This document shows, piece by piece, positions 48,998 through 64,000 of a stretch of DNA of 64,000 nucleotides (position 1 is the first letter of the stretch; each line of letters opens with the position of its first letter). Both the position numbers and the translations under genes were made by a program. Location of the stretch: positions 124,001 to 188,000 of IMG/VR virus record IMGVR_UViG_3300033143_006101, one strand, 5' to 3'. The notes below the pieces were generated by a model. It ran no database searches. It was not told the DNA's origin and saw nothing but the letters and a program-made list of their open reading frames with translations.

Positions 48998-49128
48998 AAA
49001 GGAGTTCAAGTAATAGTTGCAATTAGTTTGCAAGTGAAAGATTTGAACTTTCGACCTAAAGTTTAATAGACTTTTGCTCTACCAACTGAGCTAATTTGCT
49101 TGTAAGCAACTATATAGGAAACTCCTTT
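48998..49128 (-). ncRNA. Y RNA-like 5: Y stem enclosing a complete unpermuted tRNA-like cloverleaf (49028-49100, anticodon ATT)
   Basis: AAAGGAGUUUCC/UGAACUCCUUU; auaguugc/gcaacuau; UAGCUCAGUUGGUAGAGC; aaagu-CUAUUAA-acuuu; gaaag-UUCAAAU-cuuuc. Confidence 0.8.
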
Positions 49129-55408: not shown

Positions 55409-56968
55409 ATGAACAAGCAAGATCTAAGGCAAGAGTTAATAGATGAATTTATAAAGATAGAAAAACAATTTAATAAGGAGAGTCCTGGTAGAAAAATCAC
55501 AAGAGATTACTTTAGACAACATACTAAATATCAAGAGAAGAGTTGGACTCACCTTTTTGGAAGCTTTAAAAGTTTTAAACAACTAGCTTCAACGCAAAAG
55601 GAAGTCACTAGAGAATCCATCCGAATTAAAAAGAATGATAGAAGAAAAGGTACAAAACGAAAATATTTTGTCACGTCAGCAATCTCAGGTGCAGAACTTG
55701 ACCAAGATTTTTTTCTTAGTGCTTTAAATTATTGTAAATTAACTAATACACGATTAGTTATACTTCCAATGCGGGGAGTAAAAGTATCAGATGCAGGATA
55801 TGCTGAAGAGTTACTTGAAAATGCAGACTACTTTGCAACTGAATATATTTTCAACAGTAATTTAGTAGCTAAAGATTTTCTTATCAATCCCCAAATGATG
55901 AATCCTCTAACTGGGTTGGATCGTTTTGGACAAAAGCACTATTCTCTTATAATTGCATCCCCAAAACAATTTATGAGGGTGGTACCTGTTAGTCACGAAA
56001 GTTATCCGCACACTATTCACAGTACTGGAAGCATAACAATACCAACATATGCGTCTACACGAGTTGGTAGACTAGCAGAACAAGATCATTGCCGTGGCGG
56101 TTTAATAGTAGAAATAGAAAATGATAAAATATTTCATATTAGACAAATCCAAGCAGATAAAAACGGTAACTTTTATGATCTAGGAACTTATTATACTAGA
56201 AAAGAATCCGAAGCAAGCAGAGTATCCGCAATTGTATTGGGAGACATGCATATAGGATTCGAATGCCCAACAGCTGTCAAAGCTTGGATGGAATGTATTA
56301 AAAAAACTAACCCCAAGTATATCATAATGCATGATATCTTCAATGCCCACAGTATTTCACACCATCATATTAATAATATAGAAAGACAAGTAAATAGAAA
56401 AAAAGAATTGAATACTTTAAAAAAGGAATTGAATGTTGTTGGTGAAACATTAAAAAAGTGGAGTGAAACATTTCCTGATAAGGAAATAATTGTGGTAAGA
56501 AGTAATCATGATGAAGCATTGGATAGATACTTATTCGAATGCAGGTATAAAGATGATTGGATCAACCATAGGCTGGCCCTTAGATTAGCAGCATGGTTAA
56601 TTAATGAAAAAAATCCATTAGAAGAATACATTACAACAATGTTTAATATTAAAAACATAAGATGGTTAAGAAGAGACAAGGATTATAAATTACATAATGT
56701 AATAATCAGTGCTCATGGGGATAAAAAGGCTTATGGAGCAGCAACAAATAATGTTCTAAATGCCGAATCATCCTATGGTAACGCTATCATAGCTCATTCC
56801 CATTCCCCTCAAGTTTATAGAAACGTATGGAGAGTAGGTACAACAACTGAGCTGATATTAGACTATAATAAAGGAGCCCCTTCTAACTGGCTCCATGCAA
56901 GCTGTCTATTATACAAAAGCCAACAAAGACAAATGATTACAGCAATAGAAGGCAATTGGAAAATATAA
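55409..56968 (+). CDS. calcineurin-like metallophosphoesterase domain protein
   Basis: GDMH, HDIF, SNHD, HGD, HSH. Confidence 0.8.
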   Translation: MNKQDLRQELIDEFIKIEKQFNKESPGRKITRDYFRQHTKYQEKSWTHLFGSFKSFKQLASTQKEVTRESIRIKKNDRRKGTKRKYFVTSAISGAELDQDFFLSALNYCKLTNTRLVILPMRGVKVSDAGYAEELLENADYFATEYIFNSNLVAKDFLINPQMMNPLTGLDRFGQKHYSLIIASPKQFMRVVPVSHESYPHTIHSTGSITIPTYASTRVGRLAEQDHCRGGLIVEIENDKIFHIRQIQADKNGNFYDLGTYYTRKESEASRVSAIVLGDMHIGFECPTAVKAWMECIKKTNPKYIIMHDIFNAHSISHHHINNIERQVNRKKELNTLKKELNVVGETLKKWSETFPDKEIIVVRSNHDEALDRYLFECRYKDDWINHRLALRLAAWLINEKNPLEEYITTMFNIKNIRWLRRDKDYKLHNVIISAHGDKKAYGAATNNVLNAESSYGNAIIAHSHSPQVYRNVWRVGTTTELILDYNKGAPSNWLHASCLLYKSQQRQMITAIEGNWKI

Positions 56969-56975
56969 ATTTTAA

Positions 56976-57004
56976 TTGACAGATATATTAATTTATATTA
57001 TATT
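56976..57004 (+). promoter_or_regulatory. sigma70-type promoter
   Basis: TTGACA-17 bp-TATATT. Confidence 0.65.
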
Positions 57005-57010
57005 GACCTA

Positions 57011-57086
57011 TCTATCATATATTTGACACTCCAAGTTGAATTATATGCCTATTTTGACTGAATCCCTTCTCCGGAAGGGATTTTTT
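57011..57086 (+). ncRNA. candidate ~75-nt small RNA
   Basis: between promoter and terminator; hairpin with ACUCCAA loop; no ORF. Confidence 0.45.
57061..57086 (+). terminator. intrinsic terminator
   Basis: aatcccttc-tccg-gaagggatt followed by T-run. Confidence 0.8.
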
Positions 57087-57108
57087 CGTTTGTAACATAA
57101 AAAAAAAG

Positions 57109-57138
57109 TTGACATTATACAGCTATCCAATGTATATT
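57109..57138 (+). promoter_or_regulatory. sigma70-type promoter for the PP2C-NadE-PncB-kinase unit
   Basis: TTGACA-18 bp-TATATT. Confidence 0.6.
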
Positions 57139-57193: not shown

Positions 57194-58036
57194 ATGGAAC
57201 AATTTAAAATCGCTGGTGGTAGTGTTGCCGGACGTGATCATATTATTTCTAACAAACCCAACCAAGACGCATATGATTGGATAGAGGATGATGAATTCAT
57301 TATAGCAACTGTCTCTGATGGTTGTGGAGGAAGCCCACATAGTGAAATAGGAGCTAAATTAGGAGTTAAATTATTTAATAGTTACGTTTTAGAACATATT
57401 AAAGATATAACACAAGATGATATGCGAGTATTTATACTCAACTATCATCGCACACTAGAAATAGCTACAATATTACTCAATAAAAAAATAAACAGGCTTG
57501 CCGTAGATACTGCTCACGATATGGGATATAAGAAAACACTTAATGACTATTTCCTATTTACAATAGTCAACACAATTATTACAAAAAAGAATGCTGGCGT
57601 AGCTGTTATAGGAGATGGTATCTTTCAATTCAATGAGAGATTAACAGTAGTAGAATCCAAAGACAATACCCCAGATTATCCTATATACAGCTTATTGGGA
57701 AAACCGTTTACAATTACACACGCTACAGCAAAAGGAGATCATATTAATGATCCTTGGGATTTTCTTCTTATAGGATCCGATGGCTGTAATGATTTAATAC
57801 AAGCTGCAGACAAAACATTACCAGGTAAAAAAGGAAAAGTAGGAGAACTACGACAATTTTACGATAATGATAAATTTTATAAAAACCCTGATATGGTTCG
57901 TCGTAGGCTTGCCCAAATAAATAAGACAACGCAGAGAATTGATTGGGATAACAAAAAGATAAACACAGAACACGGGCATCTTAAAGATGATACCACTCTT
58001 ATTTGTATAAAAACAAATTATGAAAAAGGAGAGTAA
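57194..58036 (+). CDS. PP2C-family protein phosphatase
   Basis: GSVAGRDH...NQDA, VSDGCGG..HSEIGA, IGDG, GSDG, DDTT. Confidence 0.9.
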   Translation: MEQFKIAGGSVAGRDHIISNKPNQDAYDWIEDDEFIIATVSDGCGGSPHSEIGAKLGVKLFNSYVLEHIKDITQDDMRVFILNYHRTLEIATILLNKKINRLAVDTAHDMGYKKTLNDYFLFTIVNTIITKKNAGVAVIGDGIFQFNERLTVVESKDNTPDYPIYSLLGKPFTITHATAKGDHINDPWDFLLIGSDGCNDLIQAADKTLPGKKGKVGELRQFYDNDKFYKNPDMVRRRLAQINKTTQRIDWDNKKINTEHGHLKDDTTLICIKTNYEKGE

Positions 58037-58860: not shown

Positions 58861-59535
58861 ATGAACTTAAGTGAATATAAAGAACATTTTATCAATAAAG
58901 AATTAGTACCTGTCACAGGATTATGTGGCAGAATTATTCGTGGCACTAAACCAGAAGATTTTGAGACATTGACAGATGATCCAGATCGTAAATTAGTTAT
59001 GCTTATGGGCCCAGATGGTCTCGAGAAACTTCTAGGTAAAGATGCGTATAATATGCTTATAGAAATAGGATATGAAAAAGATTATATCCAACGTAAACTG
59101 GATGAAGGCAATCAATTCAAACTTGTTGTCTTTGAAGAAGGTGGAGAAGCAGATATTGCTGAATGGTTTAATGTTATACGCATAGTTGGTAAAACATATC
59201 CTAAAATTTCTAGTAAGCTACAAAAACAATTGTACGAATTAAAAGCTACCCCATTTAAACAAATAGAAAATCAAGTTGGATATGATTTTAGTGAAATAGA
59301 TAAGTTAGGAAAACAGGATGCTCGATTTATGACCTATGAACGCTATGAAAAGAGCCATGGTACGTTAGAACAAGCTAGGGCATTTTTATATTTCACAGTA
59401 CATCTAAGAGAACTCTTTTCAGGTGATGGTTATACATACACTGCAGATGGAGACAAGGGTTTAATGGAATATATTTGTCCCAATAAAAAACTCAGTGAGC
59501 TTGGAGCTCACGAAGTAATTAATATTAATTTTTAG
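58861..59535 (+). CDS. hypothetical protein
   Basis: 224-aa ORF with AGGAGG RBS; 'LFSGDGYT...G..EY'. Confidence 0.7.
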   Translation: MNLSEYKEHFINKELVPVTGLCGRIIRGTKPEDFETLTDDPDRKLVMLMGPDGLEKLLGKDAYNMLIEIGYEKDYIQRKLDEGNQFKLVVFEEGGEADIAEWFNVIRIVGKTYPKISSKLQKQLYELKATPFKQIENQVGYDFSEIDKLGKQDARFMTYERYEKSHGTLEQARAFLYFTVHLRELFSGDGYTYTADGDKGLMEYICPNKKLSELGAHEVININF

Positions 59536-59544
59536 GGAGGACAG

Positions 59545-60378
59545 ATGATATTACACTGCGATAAAACGGTTACACACACCATCAAAAGACTTCGAGAATT
59601 TACGGACATAGCAGTTATTGGCCTAAGTGGCGGGGCCGACTCTACTGTAGTTGCAAGCCTTTGTGTACAAGCACTAGGAGAAAAAAACGTATACGGTATA
59701 CACATGCCGTATAGTGAAACAGATAGAAATGAACACAACTCTATGTCTTTAAATATAGGAAAATATCTCGACATCAACAACATCACCCATGATATCTATA
59801 AAGCAGTAGATGAATGTGAAAAACAAGCACAGTTTCAATTAGGAAAACGTTTTCACGAAGACTTAACCACTCGACAATGGAACCTTCTTTTAGGCAATGT
59901 GAAAGCTCGAGAAAGGATGCAAGTACTTTACACCTACAATGAGCTAGTTGCACATGCTACAGGAAAAAAATGTAGAGTCATAGGAACAGGAAACCTCTCA
60001 GAGGATTTTATCGGGTACGCTACTAAATATGGGGATTTGGGTGTGGACATCAATCCAATAGGTGACTTGTTTAAAAGCGAAGTGTATCAATTGTTAGATT
60101 ACTTCAAAGATCTCGGAGTAATTAAAGAAGAGCACATCAATCGAATACCTTCAGCCAATTTGTGGGAAAGGCAAACGGACGAAGAAGAGATTGGAATGAC
60201 ATACGATGAAATGGAACCTATTATTCATGATCTAATGCAACCACATGGTCTTGGTCGGCCAGTAGACAAAGAGATATACAATAAAGTAAAAAAATTATAT
60301 TACAGCAATCTTCATAAAACAGAACCAATACCTGTAATTAATTTAACACAATTTACTGATAGGGTGGTATCAAGATGA
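59545..60378 (+). CDS. nadE: NH3-dependent NAD+ synthetase
   Basis: GLSGGADS, NVKARERM, GTGNLSE, GYATKYGD, NPIGDLFKSEV, PSANLW..QTDE. Confidence 0.95.
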   Translation: MILHCDKTVTHTIKRLREFTDIAVIGLSGGADSTVVASLCVQALGEKNVYGIHMPYSETDRNEHNSMSLNIGKYLDINNITHDIYKAVDECEKQAQFQLGKRFHEDLTTRQWNLLLGNVKARERMQVLYTYNELVAHATGKKCRVIGTGNLSEDFIGYATKYGDLGVDINPIGDLFKSEVYQLLDYFKDLGVIKEEHINRIPSANLWERQTDEEEIGMTYDEMEPIIHDLMQPHGLGRPVDKEIYNKVKKLYYSNLHKTEPIPVINLTQFTDRVVSR

Positions 60379-61031
60379 TAATCTACTGTACTTTAAATAA
60401 AATTACAGGAAGAATCTATATAGGCAAAGATACAAAAAATGACCCTAACTACTTAGGCTCCGGTAAAATATTAAAACACGCAATCAAAAAATATGGAGCA
60501 CACAACTTCTCGAAACATATTTTAGAACACTGTTCCTCTAAAAAAGAATTAGAAAAAAAAGAGAGAATTTGGATAACTGGCTTAAACACAACTAACCGTG
60601 TCATAGGATATAATATAACAAAAGGAGGAACAGGAGAAGATACTTTTACCAATAACCCTAACAAAGAAAAAATAAGAAAACAAAAATCCAAAAAACTAAA
60701 AGGTCGTCCTTCCCCAAAAAAGGGAACAACAATAAAAACAGAAACAAAACAAAAGATAAGTAAAAACAATGGACGATACTGGAAAGGGAAGCACCTCTCT
60801 ATACAAACAAAAAACAAACTTAGAGAAAAAAATAAAAAACAAGACATGTCTTACCAACATGTTAAATATACTTTATTATCACCAGATAATAAAATTATAA
60901 TTACAACCAAAGGCTTATCCCATTTTTTAAAAGAACATAACATTCCCAAAACCTGTTTTTATAGATTGGTAAAAAACCCTGCTAAAAAATATAAAGGATG
61001 GAAAATTTTATGCAACACTACAGTTTCTTAG
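60375..61031 (+). mobile_element. free-standing GIY-YIG homing endonuclease with NUMOD3 repeats
   Basis: IIY...IYIG, YLGSG, GYNI..GG; basic repeats; inserted between nadE and pncB. Confidence 0.85.
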
Positions 61032-62173
61032 ATACTGATTACTATAAATTTACACAAGGACAATTCGTCTTTAATCAATTTCCTAATATGAAAACGAAAC
61101 ATGTATTTTTTAATAGGAGTAAAAACATAGACTTACGTCCGTATAAACAAGAAATAGAAGAAGCTATTTTACAATTTTGTGATACGACCATCACTCCCGA
61201 CGAACTTTCCTTTTTAAAATCACAAAAAATATTTAAAACGAATTACTTAGAATTTCTCAAATTATTAAAACTGAACCCTATATTTTTAAAAATATGGAAC
61301 GATGACACTTTACATATAGAAATAGAAGGACCATTCTTCATTACTATTTATTTTGAAAAAATATTATCTATTATAAGCGAAGTTTATTCTAAAAAAACAC
61401 TACTTTACCCCGACTTTAAAGATGCTTACAAAACTTTAGATAAAAAAATAAAAATACTTAATGACAAACCATATGGAGTTAGATTTGCTGATTTTGGAAC
61501 AAGAAGAAGATACAGCTATGCTTGGCATAGAAAAGTCATAGAATACTTTCATACCAAATTAAATAATCATCAAATGATTGGCACGTCCAATGTCTTATTT
61601 GCAAAAGATTATAACATTAGACCTATTGGCACCCAGGCTCATGAAATATACATGATGGGACAACAAAGTAGTGTTAAACTAGCAGATAGCCAAAAACATA
61701 TATTACAAAAATGGGTAGACGAATATCGCGGAGACCTTGGGATCGCACTAACAGACACTATTAATCTAAACGCATTCTTGAAAGACTTTGATAATTATTT
61801 TGCTAAGCTGTACGACGGTGTACGACACGATAGTGGGGACCCCTTTCTATTCGGTAGAAAAATAATTGAACATTACCAAAAATTGGGAATAGACCCTAGA
61901 ACAAAAACAATTGTTTTTTCTGACGGTTTAAACTTTGACCTTGTGATGAAACTATTTGAAGAATTCAGTGACCAAATAAAAGTATCTTTTGGCATAGGCA
62001 CAAACCTTACTCATGATTTTTCAGACATAGGCCCTCTTAGTATAGTAATCAAAATGCAACAATGTAATGGACAACCTGTCGCTAAGATATCCGATTCACC
62101 TGGAAAAATAATGTGCCAAGACGAGCAGTATCTTAATTATTTAAAAAGAGTATTCGAAGTAACAGCTGACTAA
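60998..62173 (+). CDS. pncB: nicotinate phosphoribosyltransferase
   Basis: LDTDYYKFT, DFGTRRR, GTSN, GTQAHE, LTDT, GVRHDSGDP, FSDGL, FGIGT, KISDSPGK. Confidence 0.95.
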   Translation: MENFMQHYSFLDTDYYKFTQGQFVFNQFPNMKTKHVFFNRSKNIDLRPYKQEIEEAILQFCDTTITPDELSFLKSQKIFKTNYLEFLKLLKLNPIFLKIWNDDTLHIEIEGPFFITIYFEKILSIISEVYSKKTLLYPDFKDAYKTLDKKIKILNDKPYGVRFADFGTRRRYSYAWHRKVIEYFHTKLNNHQMIGTSNVLFAKDYNIRPIGTQAHEIYMMGQQSSVKLADSQKHILQKWVDEYRGDLGIALTDTINLNAFLKDFDNYFAKLYDGVRHDSGDPFLFGRKIIEHYQKLGIDPRTKTIVFSDGLNFDLVMKLFEEFSDQIKVSFGIGTNLTHDFSDIGPLSIVIKMQQCNGQPVAKISDSPGKIMCQDEQYLNYLKRVFEVTAD

Positions 62174-62457: not shown

Positions 62458-62777
62458 AAGAGAACAGAATAACAATAGATTTTATGCATAATGACGAAAG
62501 TTATTCTGCATGCTATAAAGCAGATTTTTACGCAGATAAATATATAGACCATCGTCTTCAAAAAGTATTGAAATGTAACGACACAATTGTAGGCTCTATG
62601 ATTAAAGATAGAAACTTAATGAAAACCTTTTCGATTGCAGGTGATGGTATAGAAGAACACCCCCCACAATACGGATTCCCCCACATCACAGGAGCTATGG
62701 AATATATAGCAGAACTTGATTTATTATTACCCCATTGGCTTATAAAACCCAGGAGAAAAGATGAGAATCTCGATTAA
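62454..62777 (+). CDS. hypothetical protein
   Basis: ORF in operon. Confidence 0.5.
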   Translation: MKENRITIDFMHNDESYSACYKADFYADKYIDHRLQKVLKCNDTIVGSMIKDRNLMKTFSIAGDGIEEHPPQYGFPHITGAMEYIAELDLLLPHWLIKPRRKDENLD

Positions 62778-64000
62778 AGGACAACAACACAACCTCACTC
62801 CCTCAAAGATCATAGGACAAGGAGGAGAAGCTGTCATATATAAAATAGATCAGAATACTGTTGCAAAAATATTCAAAGATAGTAATCACCCCGACTTCAT
62901 TACTAAAGAAGAGAAAGATGCAGTTAAATTTAGACTAAAAGAGCACCAGAAAAAACTCCTTGAATTTCCCCAGGGGCTACCGTCAAATGTAATTGCACCA
63001 AAAGACATTATACAGGATAATAATAAAGTAATCGGGTATACAATGCAATTAGTATCCGCAGCTGAAGTATTGAAAAAGTACAGTGAAAAACAATTCCGAC
63101 AAATGGGCATAAATAACAGTACTGTAATAGATATTTTTTGGATGCTCAGAAATATTGTAACTAAAGTACATGAAAAAGATATAGTCATAGGCGACTTTAA
63201 TGATTTAAATATTATGGTTGTAAATACTAGTTCATATTTAATAGATACTGATAGCTTTCAATATGGGAAATGGTTATGCCGAGTATATACAACCAGATTT
63301 GTGGATCCATTAAATTGTAATGGAGAGATGATATTATCAAAACCACATAATAAAAATTCTGATTGGTATGCGTTCAATATTTTATTATTTCAATCATTAT
63401 TATTAGTAGATCCTTATGGAGGCGTGTTCAAACCAAAAGATAAAAGCCAAAACATACCTCATAACAAAAGACCTTTATATAGAATTACAGTATTCAACAA
63501 TGAAGTTAAATATCCTAAACCAGCAACACCGTATAGCATATTACAAGATGATCTATTACATCATTTCCAACAAGTATTTGAAAAAGATATTAGAACACCG
63601 TTTCCGGAAAAACTTTTAGAAATGGAATGGAAAAAATGTAAGAAATGTGATTTAATGCATGCTAGATCACAATGCCCTATTTGTATAGGCATAGTACCAG
63701 CACCAATAATAAAAGAGGCTATTCAAGTAAGAGGAAAAGTGACTGCTACAAAGAAATTTACAACAAAAGGTATTATCGTATTTGCTCAGGTATTAAATAA
63801 TAAATTATATTGGTTATTTACTAAAAAAGATGACAGTACCCCCATCTTATTTTTAGGTGTAGATAAAACAGAATCTGAATTACAAAAAGTAGTCCTAAGA
63901 CCCGGTAAAAGATTCAGAATATATAATAATTGTTATGTAGAAGGGCAAACTACAAAACTTTATTATAATGCAACTAAAACCAGGCACCCAGGACAGCAAA
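62761..64000 (+). CDS. Ser/Thr protein kinase (runs off window end; not in ORF track)
   Basis: hand translation MRISIKG...IGQGGEAVIY, VAKIF, IVIGDFNDLNI, LIDTDSFQ, DWYAF; then CKKC...CPIC zinc ribbon. Confidence 0.88.
   Translation, partial: MRISIKGQQHNLTPSKIIGQGGEAVIYKIDQNTVAKIFKDSNHPDFITKEEKDAVKFRLKEHQKKLLEFPQGLPSNVIAPKDIIQDNNKVIGYTMQLVSAAEVLKKYSEKQFRQMGINNSTVIDIFWMLRNIVTKVHEKDIVIGDFNDLNIMVVNTSSYLIDTDSFQYGKWLCRVYTTRFVDPLNCNGEMILSKPHNKNSDWYAFNILLFQSLLLVDPYGGVFKPKDKSQNIPHNKRPLYRITVFNNEVKYPKPATPYSILQDDLLHHFQQVFEKDIRTPFPEKLLEMEWKKCKKCDLMHARSQCPICIGIVPAPIIKEAIQVRGKVTATKKFTTKGIIVFAQVLNNKLYWLFTKKDDSTPILFLGVDKTESELQKVVLRPGKRFRIYNNCYVEGQTTKLYYNATKTRHPGQQ

What the first reader, a model, noticed from the sequence alone, without database searches (positions are those of the whole stretch)
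59545..62173. Phage nadE + pncB: a deamidated (Preiss-Handler-type) NAD+ rebuilding route
Seen: intact NadE and PncB separated by a GIY-YIG endonuclease. Known: described phage NAD reconstitution pathways (NARP1, NARP2) use amidated intermediates to counter NAD-depleting defences such as Thoeris and SIR2 systems, while PncB and NadE work through nicotinate and NaAD. NadD/NadM and PncA are not seen in this window. Inference: a different NAD-restoring counter-defence route.
Basis: partly seen in the sequence, partly recalled or inferred. Interest (0 to 1): 0.6.

Follow-up and report, generated by a model that had tools for sequence, protein, structure and literature searches.

The report
Phage NAD salvage island without NadD
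A complete 253-kb jumbo phage carries intact genes for three of the four steps that turn nicotinamide into NAD+ (a nicotinamidase just outside the window, PncB and NadE) but not the middle adenylyltransferase; this arrangement recurs in other phages, is untested, and could keep NAD+ up in the infected cell.

Summary
NadE (59545-60378), a free-standing GIY-YIG endonuclease gene (60375-61031) and PncB (60998-62173) are intact, with all catalytic motifs.

The window lies in a complete 252,876-bp phage genome.
- A divergent long-form nicotinamidase (PncA-like, 340 aa) lies 835 nt past the window end, so nicotinamide can enter the route.
- NadD/NadM is absent from the whole genome, even with a phage-tuned profile, so a host adenylyltransferase must bridge NaMN to NaAD.

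The route differs from NARP1, NARP2 and NARP3. Phage Preiss-Handler clusters (pncB-nadD-nadE) were already described in 2024, with the same untested counter-defence speculation.

Of 49 PncB-carrying viral records, 17 have PncA+NadE+NadD-like and 8 share this NadD-less set.

New here:
- The endonuclease is an insertion, absent in a syntenic relative, and related genes abut pncB/nadE in five other phages.
- The 224-aa ORF upstream of NadE belongs to an unnamed family of 853 clusters that is fused to long-form nicotinamidase in other genomes.
- A kinase-like gene, a PP2C gene and a 261-aa ORF recur in the same island.

Counter-defence is plausible but not shown.

The parts
56976..57138 (+). Two sigma-70-like promoter matches (56976-57004 and 57109-57138, 11 of 12 positions each) flank a terminator-like hairpin (57060-57083). 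This is a possible start of the transcription unit that runs through the NAD genes.
   Evidence: These are consensus matches only, and the total promoter-like count in the region is below the shuffled expectation, so the evidence is weak.
57194..58036 (+). PP2C-type Ser/Thr phosphatase, 280 aa, a recurrent member of the island.
   Evidence: PF13672 E=1.8e-14. It is syntenic in L011 at 58% identity. It is also present next to the kinase-like gene in L064 and L097.
58861..59535 (+). 224-aa protein (P0121) of an unnamed family, 10 nt upstream of NadE. The same domain is fused to long-form nicotinamidase in other genomes.
59545..60378 (+). NadE, a single-domain NH3-dependent NAD+ synthetase, 277 aa. 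It catalyses the last step (NaAD to NAD+).
   Evidence: It is 60% identical to the syntenic gene in L011.
60375..61031 (+). Free-standing GIY-YIG homing-endonuclease gene, 218 aa, inserted between nadE and pncB.
   Evidence: TIGR01453 is above its cut-off and phrog_314 E=7.5e-32. The syntenic relative L011 lacks it; nadE and pncB there are 9 nt apart. There is no paralog in the genome. Related genes abut pncB or nadE in L017, L029, L034, L035 and L037.
60998..62173 (+). PncB, nicotinate phosphoribosyltransferase, 391 aa (probable start at 61010). It catalyses the first committed step (nicotinate + PRPP to NaMN).
   Evidence: It is the only NAPRTase-family gene in the genome.
62761..64000 (+). 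5' part of a 638-aa protein-kinase-like gene; it runs on to window-equivalent position 64677. It is followed outside the window by the nicotinamidase (genome 188835-189857, window-equivalent 64835-65857). After an inserted helicase/RNase H block comes the conserved 261-aa ORF (genome 192674-193459).
   Evidence: Kinase-like gene: Pkinase E=5.9e-7, and a PKA catalytic-loop match to 1fot at E=9e-6. Atlas places it in a family of 570-640 aa. It recurs inside NAD clusters at 24-43% identity. Nicotinamidase.

Best explanation
The phage encodes a host-dependent, deamidated NAD+ salvage route.

Proposed steps:
1. A long-form nicotinamidase converts nicotinamide to nicotinate and ammonia.
2. PncB converts nicotinate and PRPP to NaMN.
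3. The host's own NaMN adenylyltransferase (NadD, or NadM in an archaeon) makes NaAD.
4. The phage's ammonia-dependent NadE amidates NaAD to NAD+.

Expressed together during infection, these enzymes raise or restore the NAD+ pool from nicotinamide or nicotinate, whatever drains it. The drain could be host NADase defences or the phage's own NAD+-using enzymes.

Shown: gene identity, intact catalytic residues, conserved synteny, absence of NadD, and recurrence of the gene set in other phages.

Inferred: expression, substrate specificity, reliance on host NadD, and the effect on the NAD+ pool.

The GIY-YIG gene is a selfish insertion and not part of the pathway.
For: - Enzyme identities exceed curated cut-offs and the active-site motifs are intact.
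- Nicotinamidase: it belongs to a family of more than 4000 proteins that sources name nicotinamidase. NF008623 gives E=1.4e-7. The AF2 model has pLDDT 88.6. The Foldseek top 14 are all solved nicotinamidases at probability 1.0 and TM 0.72-0.79 by target. The family-invariant residues Asp53, Lys215 and Cys267, plus Asp101, His103 and His181, match the nicotinamidase triad and metal site.
- All of these genes lie on one strand in one block.
- The block is conserved at 54-78% protein identity in relative L011, which indicates purifying selection.
- NadD absence: there is no CTP_transf_like match. A filter-free search of all six frames with a phage-tuned NadD profile gave a best E of 0.34, no HxGH motif was found, and the positive control scored 1e-14. 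The genome is complete, with terminal repeats and a CheckV estimate of 100%.
- The same PncA+PncB+NadE set without a NadD-like gene occurs in 8 of 49 PncB-carrying viral records, including two complete genomes, G009 and G010, where the genes are contiguous.
- From established biochemistry: nicotinamidase releases the ammonia that NadE consumes, and NadD is a housekeeping enzyme of nearly all bacteria.
Against: - There are no expression or metabolite data; no sequencing run was listed.
- The host is unknown, so the presence of a host NadD or NadM is assumed.
- NadE's preference for NaAD over NaMN is not established. Its clade contains the Francisella NMN synthetase 3fiu.
- The nicotinamidase is a long form with an insertion of about 70 aa. 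It scores below the Pfam gathering cut-off (18.6 against 27 bits), so its substrate is inferred from fold and active site.
- Most near-complete PncB phages with NadE do carry a NadD-like gene (7 of 9), so NadD is evidently useful.
- Four conserved island members (the 224-aa domain, the 261-aa ORF, the kinase-like gene and PP2C) are unexplained by this simple model.
Confidence: 0.6

Rival explanations
1. Dedicated counter-defence. The island is selected mainly to rebuild NAD+ after Thoeris, DSR, SIR2-HerA or RES-type effectors cleave it. It uses the released nicotinamide plus PRPP, like a deamidated analogue of NARP2.
For: - A nicotinamidase is present, so the defence product nicotinamide is a direct input.
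- The route needs PRPP, not ADPR. By the logic given for NARP2 in 10.64898/2026.01.28.702374, it would also work when ADPR is phosphorylated by aRES.
- NAD+ reconstitution by ordinary salvage enzymes is a proven anti-defence strategy: NARP2 and NARP3.
- PMC11662467 proposed the same idea for phage Preiss-Handler genes.
Against: - No experiment exists for any phage PncA/PncB/NadE set in the library searched.
- Many hosts already have these enzymes and are still depleted by NADases.
- The route costs PRPP and about three ATP per NAD+ and depends on host NadD.
- The island is linked to an NAD-dependent ligase and other conserved genes that have no evident role in defence evasion.
- No known anti-defence gene was identified next to it.
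Confidence: 0.3
2. Self-service recycling. The island mainly supports phage-encoded NAD+ consumers. The 224-aa protein is an NAD+-cleaving or ADP-ribosylating enzyme whose inhibitory by-product, nicotinamide, is removed by the nicotinamidase and recycled through PncB and NadE. The NAD-dependent ligase is a further consumer.
For: - The 224-aa domain is fused to a full-length long-form nicotinamidase in 10 independent cluster representatives and in phage-like contigs L096 and L097.
- It sits 10 nt upstream of NadE here and in L011.
- Family-invariant Arg and Glu residues lie on strands.
- An NAD-dependent ligase lies in the cluster in L011, L053 and L055. The phage has its own short form at genome 77954-79060.
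- From established knowledge: nicotinamide inhibits sirtuins and ADP-ribosyltransferases.
Against: - No Pfam ART or RES model matches any of 34 family members.
- The family also occurs in contexts with no NAD genes: L013, L014 and L015.
- It is absent from the other 80 viral PncB loci and from the NadD-less phages G009 and G010 (positive control).
- Ligase turnover yields NMN, not nicotinamide.
Confidence: 0.25
3. Francisella-type variant. The phage NadE is an NMN synthetase that amidates NaMN directly. The route would then be nicotinate to NaMN to NMN, with a host NMN adenylyltransferase (NadR or NadM) finishing the job, so NadD is not needed.
For: - NadE belongs to the short clade that includes F. 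tularensis NadE 3fiu, with E=4e-24 and similarity like that to the other top hits.
- NadD is absent from the phage.
- PMC3376133 documents that this functional shift exists.
Against: - The phage NadE is no closer to 3fiu than to the Campylobacter, Pyrococcus and Helicobacter enzymes.
- PMC3376133 reports that typical single-domain members, including the archaeal one, have no NMN synthetase activity.
- An adenylyltransferase is still needed, and the phage has none.
- The specificity residues could not be checked because the primary paper is not held.
Confidence: 0.1
4. Passenger genes. These are recently captured host genes with no role in infection.
For: The closest cellular PncB homologues sit in ordinary pncA-pncB operons. 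A selfish endonuclease sits in the cluster.
Against: - The genes are intact, with all catalytic motifs.
- The block is conserved between phages at 54-78% identity.
- Similar sets recur in dozens of viral genomes.
Confidence: 0.03

Closest known systems
Preiss-Handler clusters of 'NAD-jumbo phages' (PMC11662467, e.g. Kuafu_71 pncB-nadD-nadE)
   Same: Large phages carry clustered pncB and nadE. The deamidated route is the same, and so is the untested suggestion of countering Sir2-type NAD+ depletion. My IMG/VR survey finds the complete set in 17 of 49 PncB-carrying records. One example is G025, with contiguous pncB-nadD-nadE-pncA.
   Different: This phage lacks nadD, so it does not meet that paper's criterion of a complete pathway. 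It adds a long-form nicotinamidase, has a homing endonuclease between nadE and pncB, and sits in a wider conserved island (224-aa domain, kinase-like gene, PP2C, 261-aa ORF).
NARP2 (Nampt + Nmnat; Osterman et al. 2024) and the Vibrio phage KVP40 NadV/NatV salvage pathway
   Same: An ordinary salvage pathway carried by a phage. It starts from nicotinamide and PRPP and does not depend on ADPR.
   Different: NARP2 uses amidated intermediates (NMN), needs two enzymes and is self-sufficient. The route here uses deamidated intermediates (nicotinate, NaMN, NaAD), has three phage enzymes and needs a host adenylyltransferase. The only NAPRTase-family gene is PncB-type, and there is no Nmnat.
NARP1 (Adps + Namat) and NARP3 (PnuC + NadR-like; PMC13464706)
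   Same: The aim is the same: to restore NAD+ in the infected cell.
   Different: The phage has no PRPP-synthetase-like gene, no second NAPRTase-family gene, no PnuC and no NadR/Nmnat domain.
Bacterial nicotinamide salvage (PncA-PncB-NadD-NadE), e.g. the P. aeruginosa pncA-pncB1-nadE operon
   Same: The enzymes and chemistry are the same. The phage PncB is about 45% identical to P. aeruginosa PncB 1yir. PA5oct infection induces the host pncA-pncB1-nadE operon (PMC7318152), which is the same three genes without nadD.
   Different: The genes are carried by a virus. The nicotinamidase is the 340-aa long form rather than the 180-215-aa PncA. NadD is left to the host.
Free-standing GIY-YIG homing endonucleases of T4-like phages (Seg type)
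   Same: A small GIY-YIG ORF is wedged between two conserved genes and overlaps both. It is absent from a close relative.
   Different: The target is not known. The association with pncB/nadE junctions in six different phages has not, to my knowledge, been described.

Membership tests
Complete Preiss-Handler pathway (the 'NAD-jumbo phage' criterion) | Nicotinate phosphoribosyltransferase (PncB) is present. | tested here: met
   TIGR01514 398.9 bits against 269.55. Motifs are intact against 1yir.
Complete Preiss-Handler pathway (the 'NAD-jumbo phage' criterion) | NaMN adenylyltransferase (NadD or NadM) is present. | tested here: not met
   PF01467 gives no match in the complete genome. A phage-tuned HMM run with --max on all six frames gave a best E of 0.34. 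No HxGH motif was found. The control locus scored 1e-14.
Complete Preiss-Handler pathway (the 'NAD-jumbo phage' criterion) | NAD+ synthetase (NadE) is present. | tested here: met
   TIGR00552 174.5 bits against 63.65. The P-loop and substrate motifs are intact.
Nicotinamidase (PncA/Pnc1) | Isochorismatase-like fold with an Asp-Lys-Cys triad and an Asp/His/His metal site. | tested here: met
   The Foldseek top 14 are all solved nicotinamidases at probability 1.0. Asp53, Lys215, Cys267, Asp101, His103 and His181 are invariant in the family.
Nicotinamidase (PncA/Pnc1) | The sequence model scores above its curated cut-off. | tested here: not met
   PF00857 scores 18.6 bits against 27. NF008623 scores 31.6 bits against 174. 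This is a divergent long form, so membership rests on fold, active site and the names that sources give to close relatives.
NadE as NAD synthetase rather than NMN synthetase | Preference for NaAD over NaMN. | not testable with these tools
   The enzyme is about equally distant from NAD synthetases (3p52, 2e18, 1xng) and the Francisella NMN synthetase 3fiu. The paper with the specificity determinants is not held.
NARP1 | An Adps (PRPP-synthetase-like) gene plus a Namat (NAMPT-like) gene. | tested here: not met
   There is no Pribosyltran_N match. The only NAPRTase-family gene is PncB.
NARP2 | A Nampt gene plus an Nmnat gene. | tested here: not met
NARP3 | A PnuC transporter plus a NadR-like kinase/adenylyltransferase. 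| tested here: not met
   There is no PF04973 match and no PF01467 match.
Free-standing GIY-YIG homing endonuclease | A GIY-YIG catalytic domain with a C-terminal DNA-binding region, lying between genes, and present or absent among relatives. | tested here: met
   TIGR01453 58.2 bits against 56.05; phrog_314 E=7.5e-32. It is absent at the same junction in L011. Cleavage activity was not tested.
ART/RES-type NAD+-using enzymes (for the 224-aa protein) | An ART-like split beta-sheet fold with catalytic Arg and Glu. | tested here: inconclusive

The most novel reading that the evidence does not exclude
The NAD genes are part of a larger conserved viral 'NAD island' whose core is PP2C, a kinase-like protein, the 224-aa domain, the long nicotinamidase and the 261-aa ORF. 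In this reading the unnamed 224-aa domain family (853 clusters, often fused to nicotinamidase) is a new NAD+- or nicotinamide-handling enzyme. It might, for example, be a divergent ART-like NAD+ consumer coupled to immediate nicotinamide removal. The island would then be a regulated NAD+ turnover system rather than a simple salvage pathway.
Probability: 0.25. Interest if true: 0.75.

Novelty: new variant of a known kind. Interest (0 to 1): 0.5.

Why it matters
NAD+ depletion is one of the commonest bacterial anti-phage strategies. All three phage NAD+ reconstitution pathways shown by experiment (NARP1, NARP2, NARP3) use amidated intermediates. A deamidated, nicotinamidase-fed route that borrows the host's NadD would be a fourth solution. 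It is directly testable in E. coli, which supplies NadD.

The NadD-less gene set recurs in complete phage genomes. This suggests that phages need to boost only the entry and exit steps of the pathway.

Separately, the fusion of an unnamed 224-aa domain to nicotinamidase gives a concrete functional handle on a large family of hypothetical proteins. The recurrent endonuclease insertions beside pncB and nadE show that these metabolic genes are shared widely enough among phages to sustain a homing element.

Tried and rejected
- megablast of the region against GenBank phages found no match.
- A single-sequence scan of IMG/VR with PncB found nothing. The alignment-based scan worked.
- The whole-genome PF00857 scan missed the nicotinamidase, so a six-frame first look returning nothing is not proof of absence. 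I therefore re-tested NadD with my own profile.
- A profile of close nicotinamidase homologues against PDB sequences found no hit. The fold search settled the question.
- 224-aa protein as the missing adenylyltransferase: rejected as unlikely.
  - It has no HUP or Rossmann-like signature.
  - It co-occurs with a NadD-like gene in L097.
  - It is absent from the NadD-less complete phages G009 and G010 (control).
  - It is not similar to unannotated neighbours in megaphage LR756501.
- Searches with the 224-aa protein or its model in ESM Atlas, PDB Foldseek and BFVD gave nothing significant. The atlas fold library was not available.
- Complex prediction of the nicotinamidase with the 224-aa protein scored 0.00 against a mark of 0.32. 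The tool gives no verdict, so this is evidence neither for nor against binding.
- The look-up of sequencing runs listed no run, so read laying was not used and expression is untested.
- The PncB in the Moraxella phage Mcat17 record lies outside attR, so it is probably host flank. About 20 IMG/VR loci at roughly 40% identity sit at contig ends and look like prophage-flanking host genes. They were left out of the tally, together with short contigs (L036, L037, L047, L048, L057, L061, L067) and L070, which is not held.
- The Sorci 2009 paper on the Francisella enzyme is not held, so the NMN synthetase specificity residues were not checked.
- No alternative genetic code was used. The big profile search was used once, only after the word search and family scans left the 224-aa protein open.
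Full report
**What is there**

The window is bases 124001-188000 of a complete virus record of 252,876 bp. The record has direct terminal repeats and a CheckV completeness of 100% (the repeat is 72 bp by my check). G+C is about 33% and there are 25 tRNA genes.

At the reported coordinates three + strand ORFs are packed head to tail.
- NadE (59545-60378, 277 aa) exceeds the curated cut-off of TIGR00552 (174.5 against 63.65 bits) and matches PF02540 at E=2e-54.
- The middle ORF (60375-61031, 218 aa) is a GIY-YIG endonuclease. TIGR01453 is just above its cut-off and phrog_314 gives E=7.5e-32.
- PncB (60998-62173) exceeds the cut-offs of TIGR01514 and NF003704 by a wide margin.

Alignments to solved structures show the catalytic signatures of both enzymes are intact.

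**The rest of the pathway**

I searched the whole genome, not just the window. There is no PRPP-synthetase-like gene, no Nudix gene, no second NAPRTase-family gene and no PnuC. NARP1, NARP2 and NARP3 are therefore excluded.

The family scan for isochorismatase also returned nothing. A Pfam scan of the ORFs just downstream of the window then gave a faint isochorismatase hit in a 340-aa ORF at genome 188835-189857, 835 nt beyond the window end. I followed this up.
- Its best PDB sequence hits are M. tuberculosis PncA and Leishmania nicotinamidase, aligned on the catalytic Asp and metal-binding His motifs.
- It belongs to a family of more than 4000 proteins of about 350 aa that NCBI and JGI call nicotinamidase. 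The closest members are 76-78% identical.
- The catalytic Asp-Lys-Cys triad and the Asp/His/His metal site are invariant in that family.
- An AlphaFold model (pLDDT 88.6) hits 14 solved nicotinamidases first, at probability 1.0.

Because the quick scan had missed this gene, I re-tested the absence of NadD more carefully. I built a profile from 11 NadD-like genes that lie beside pncB in other viral contigs and ran it without filters against every open frame of 50 aa or more. The best E-value was 0.34, no HxGH motif was present, and a control locus scored 1e-14. NadD/NadM is absent.

**Relatives and the endonuclease**

A 24-kb JGI contig (L011) is a syntenic relative. Its gene order is metallophosphoesterase, PP2C, 224-aa ORF, NadE, PncB, kinase-like gene, NAD-dependent DNA ligase, three small ORFs, nicotinamidase, 261-aa ORF. 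Protein identity to our phage is 54-78%.

In L011, nadE and pncB are 9 nt apart and there is no endonuclease. The GIY-YIG gene in the window is therefore an insertion. It has no paralog in the genome.

Related GIY-YIG genes (29-41% identity) directly abut pncB or nadE in five other, different viral loci: L017, L029, L034, L035 and L037. This looks like a homing hot spot.

**How common is this**

GenBank phages hold PncB in only 14 records. In several of them pncB and nadE are adjacent:
- MT835470 has pncA, a 98-aa ORF, pncB and nadE.
- LR756501 has pncB, two ORFs and nadE.
- MT835946 has pncB and nadE.

The best PncB homologue overall (58% identity) sits on a phage-like contig next to a NadE. 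The next hits are bacterial pncA-pncB operons.

IMG/VR holds 426 viral contigs with a PncB relative. I searched 49 whole records. NadE is present in 34, a PncA-like gene in 34 and a NadD/NadM-family gene in 25.
- The full set (NadE, PncA-like and NadD-like) occurs in 17 records.
- The NadD-less set (NadE and PncA-like only) occurs in 8 records.
- Among the 12 near-complete genomes, five have the full set and two have the NadD-less set. Those two are G009 (168 kb) and G010 (140 kb, terminal repeats), both with contiguous genes.

Our phage therefore belongs to a recurring NadD-less minority.

**Literature**

- NARP1 and NARP2 (bioRxiv 10.1101/2024.02.11.579819) and NARP3 (PMC13464706) use amidated intermediates and do not mention PncB or NadE.
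- PMC11662467 (Microbiome 2024) already reported that 174 of 668 gut jumbo phages encode a complete salvage or Preiss-Handler pathway. It named a pncB-nadD-nadE cluster and suggested, without testing, that this might counter Sir2-type NAD+ depletion.
- PA5oct infection induces the host pncA-pncB1-nadE operon (PMC7318152).
- I found no experimental test of a phage PncA/PncB/NadE route.

The idea is not new. The NadD-less, nicotinamidase-containing configuration and its wider context are.

**The wider island**

The 224-aa ORF 10 nt upstream of NadE has no hit in Pfam, NCBIfam, PHROGs or PDB sequences. It does define a family. The word search found 88 members, and the exhaustive profile search found 853 clusters.

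In that family, 10 of the 26 representatives of 400 aa or more are fusions. They carry this domain at the N-terminus and a full-length long-form nicotinamidase at the C-terminus. One more is fused to a homologue of the 261-aa ORF.

The fusion is a single ORF in two contigs.
- In L097 the order is PP2C, kinase-like gene, fusion, small ORF, 261-aa homologue, small ORF, NadD-like gene.
- In L096 the order is kinase-like gene, fusion, 261-aa homologue.

The kinase-like gene also recurs inside NAD clusters of more distant phages, for example short ligase, long nicotinamidase, kinase-like gene, PncB, NadE in L053 and L055. It has a genuine protein-kinase catalytic core.

The conserved core is therefore PP2C, the kinase-like gene, the 224-aa domain, the long nicotinamidase and the 261-aa ORF. 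NadE, PncB, NadD and the ligase come and go.

The domain is unlikely to be the missing adenylyltransferase. It co-occurs with a NadD-like gene in L097, and it is absent from the NadD-less phages G009 and G010 (control).

**Mechanism**

The best-supported reading is a host-dependent deamidated salvage route:
1. Nicotinamide is converted to nicotinate by the phage nicotinamidase.
2. Nicotinate is converted to NaMN by phage PncB.
3. NaMN is converted to NaAD by the host NadD or NadM.
4. NaAD is converted to NAD+ by the phage's ammonia-dependent NadE.

The ammonia released in step 1 is the co-substrate of step 4 (established biochemistry).

The data cannot say whether the selected benefit is evasion of NADase defences, supply for the phage's own NAD+ users, or both. 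Those users would be the short NAD-dependent ligase at genome 77954-79060 and possibly the 224-aa protein. A Francisella-type NMN synthetase role for NadE remains possible but is not favoured.

**Limits**

- The host is unknown. Homologues of island proteins appear on contigs binned to Lokiarchaeota and to Bacteroidota. The sigma-70-like promoters upstream of PP2C are only consensus matches.
- There are no expression data.
- The complex prediction for the nicotinamidase and the 224-aa protein gave no verdict.

**Verdict**

The genes are real, and the deamidated route is real and distinct from NARP1-3. The route is incomplete without the host, it was already anticipated in the literature, and its counter-defence role is unproven. 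It is a new variant of a known kind, of moderate interest. The fused 224-aa domain and the endonuclease hot spot are the freshest leads.

Noticed in passing
window 60375-61031; loci L017 9205-9909, L029 12718-13071, L034 9351-9977, L035 6926-7660, L037 2754-3392: GIY-YIG endonuclease genes related to the one in the window (29-41% identity) directly abut pncB or nadE in five other, different viral contigs. The syntenic relative L011 has none. The pncB/nadE junctions look like a homing hot spot for one endonuclease lineage.
   Followed up: partly
window 62761-64000 (runs on to genome 188677); window 57194-58036; loci L053, L055, L059, L060, L023, L064, L097: A 570-640-aa protein-kinase-like gene recurs inside phage NAD gene clusters at only 24-43% identity. 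A PP2C phosphatase accompanies it in three loci (L011, L064, L097). No link between Ser/Thr signalling and NAD salvage is known to me.
   Followed up: partly
genome G000:C1:192674-193459 (outside the window); L011 11042-11827; L024 8342-9001; L097 8084-8881: A 261-aa ORF with no Pfam or PDB match follows the nicotinamidase in several phages. In one protein (P0336) it is fused to the 224-aa domain. It is a further unexplained member of the island.
   Followed up: partly
L013 (GCA_016930515.1 contig, 'Lokiarchaeota' MAG), L014, and the hit tables: Close homologues of the 224-aa protein (69%) and homologues of PncB (52-53%) are on contigs binned to Lokiarchaeota or Promethearchaeota. The nearest named nicotinamidase (76%) is labelled Bacteroidota. 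The host domain of this phage is unresolved, and some of these short contigs may be mis-binned viral fragments.
   Followed up: no
window 55409-56968; genome 196079-196762; L008 4187-4891: Calcineurin-like metallophosphoesterase genes lie near the NAD genes here, in L011 and in gut phage MT835470. A 2026 preprint notes that calcineurin-domain proteins of the Metis defence system cleave NAD+ to AMP and NMN. Whether the phage enzymes touch NAD+ or its fragments is unknown.
   Followed up: no
genome G000:C1:77954-79060 (outside the window): The phage's NAD-dependent DNA ligase is a short form of 368 aa with only the adenylation and OB domains. The relative L011 has a 632-aa form with BRCT inside the NAD cluster. 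The two are only 30% identical.
   Followed up: partly
window 49028-49100 (genome c173028-173100): ARAGORN calls a tRNA-Asn with the unusual anticodon ATT, in addition to a normal tRNA-Asn (GTT). The genome has 25 tRNA genes in all.
   Followed up: no
genome G000:C1:197489-200482, - strand (outside the window): A class II ribonucleotide reductase gene is interrupted by an intein with a LAGLIDADG endonuclease domain. This is a second kind of selfish element in the same region.
   Followed up: no
genome G000:C1:242530-242880 (outside the window): A borderline Macro-domain ORF (19.8 bits against a cut-off of 22). Macro domains handle ADP-ribose derivatives, so this is a possible further link to NAD+ turnover.
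   Followed up: no
method note: The six-frame family scan of the whole genome returned no candidate for PF00857, although a divergent nicotinamidase is present. Empty answers from that first look should be backed by a second method.
   Followed up: yes
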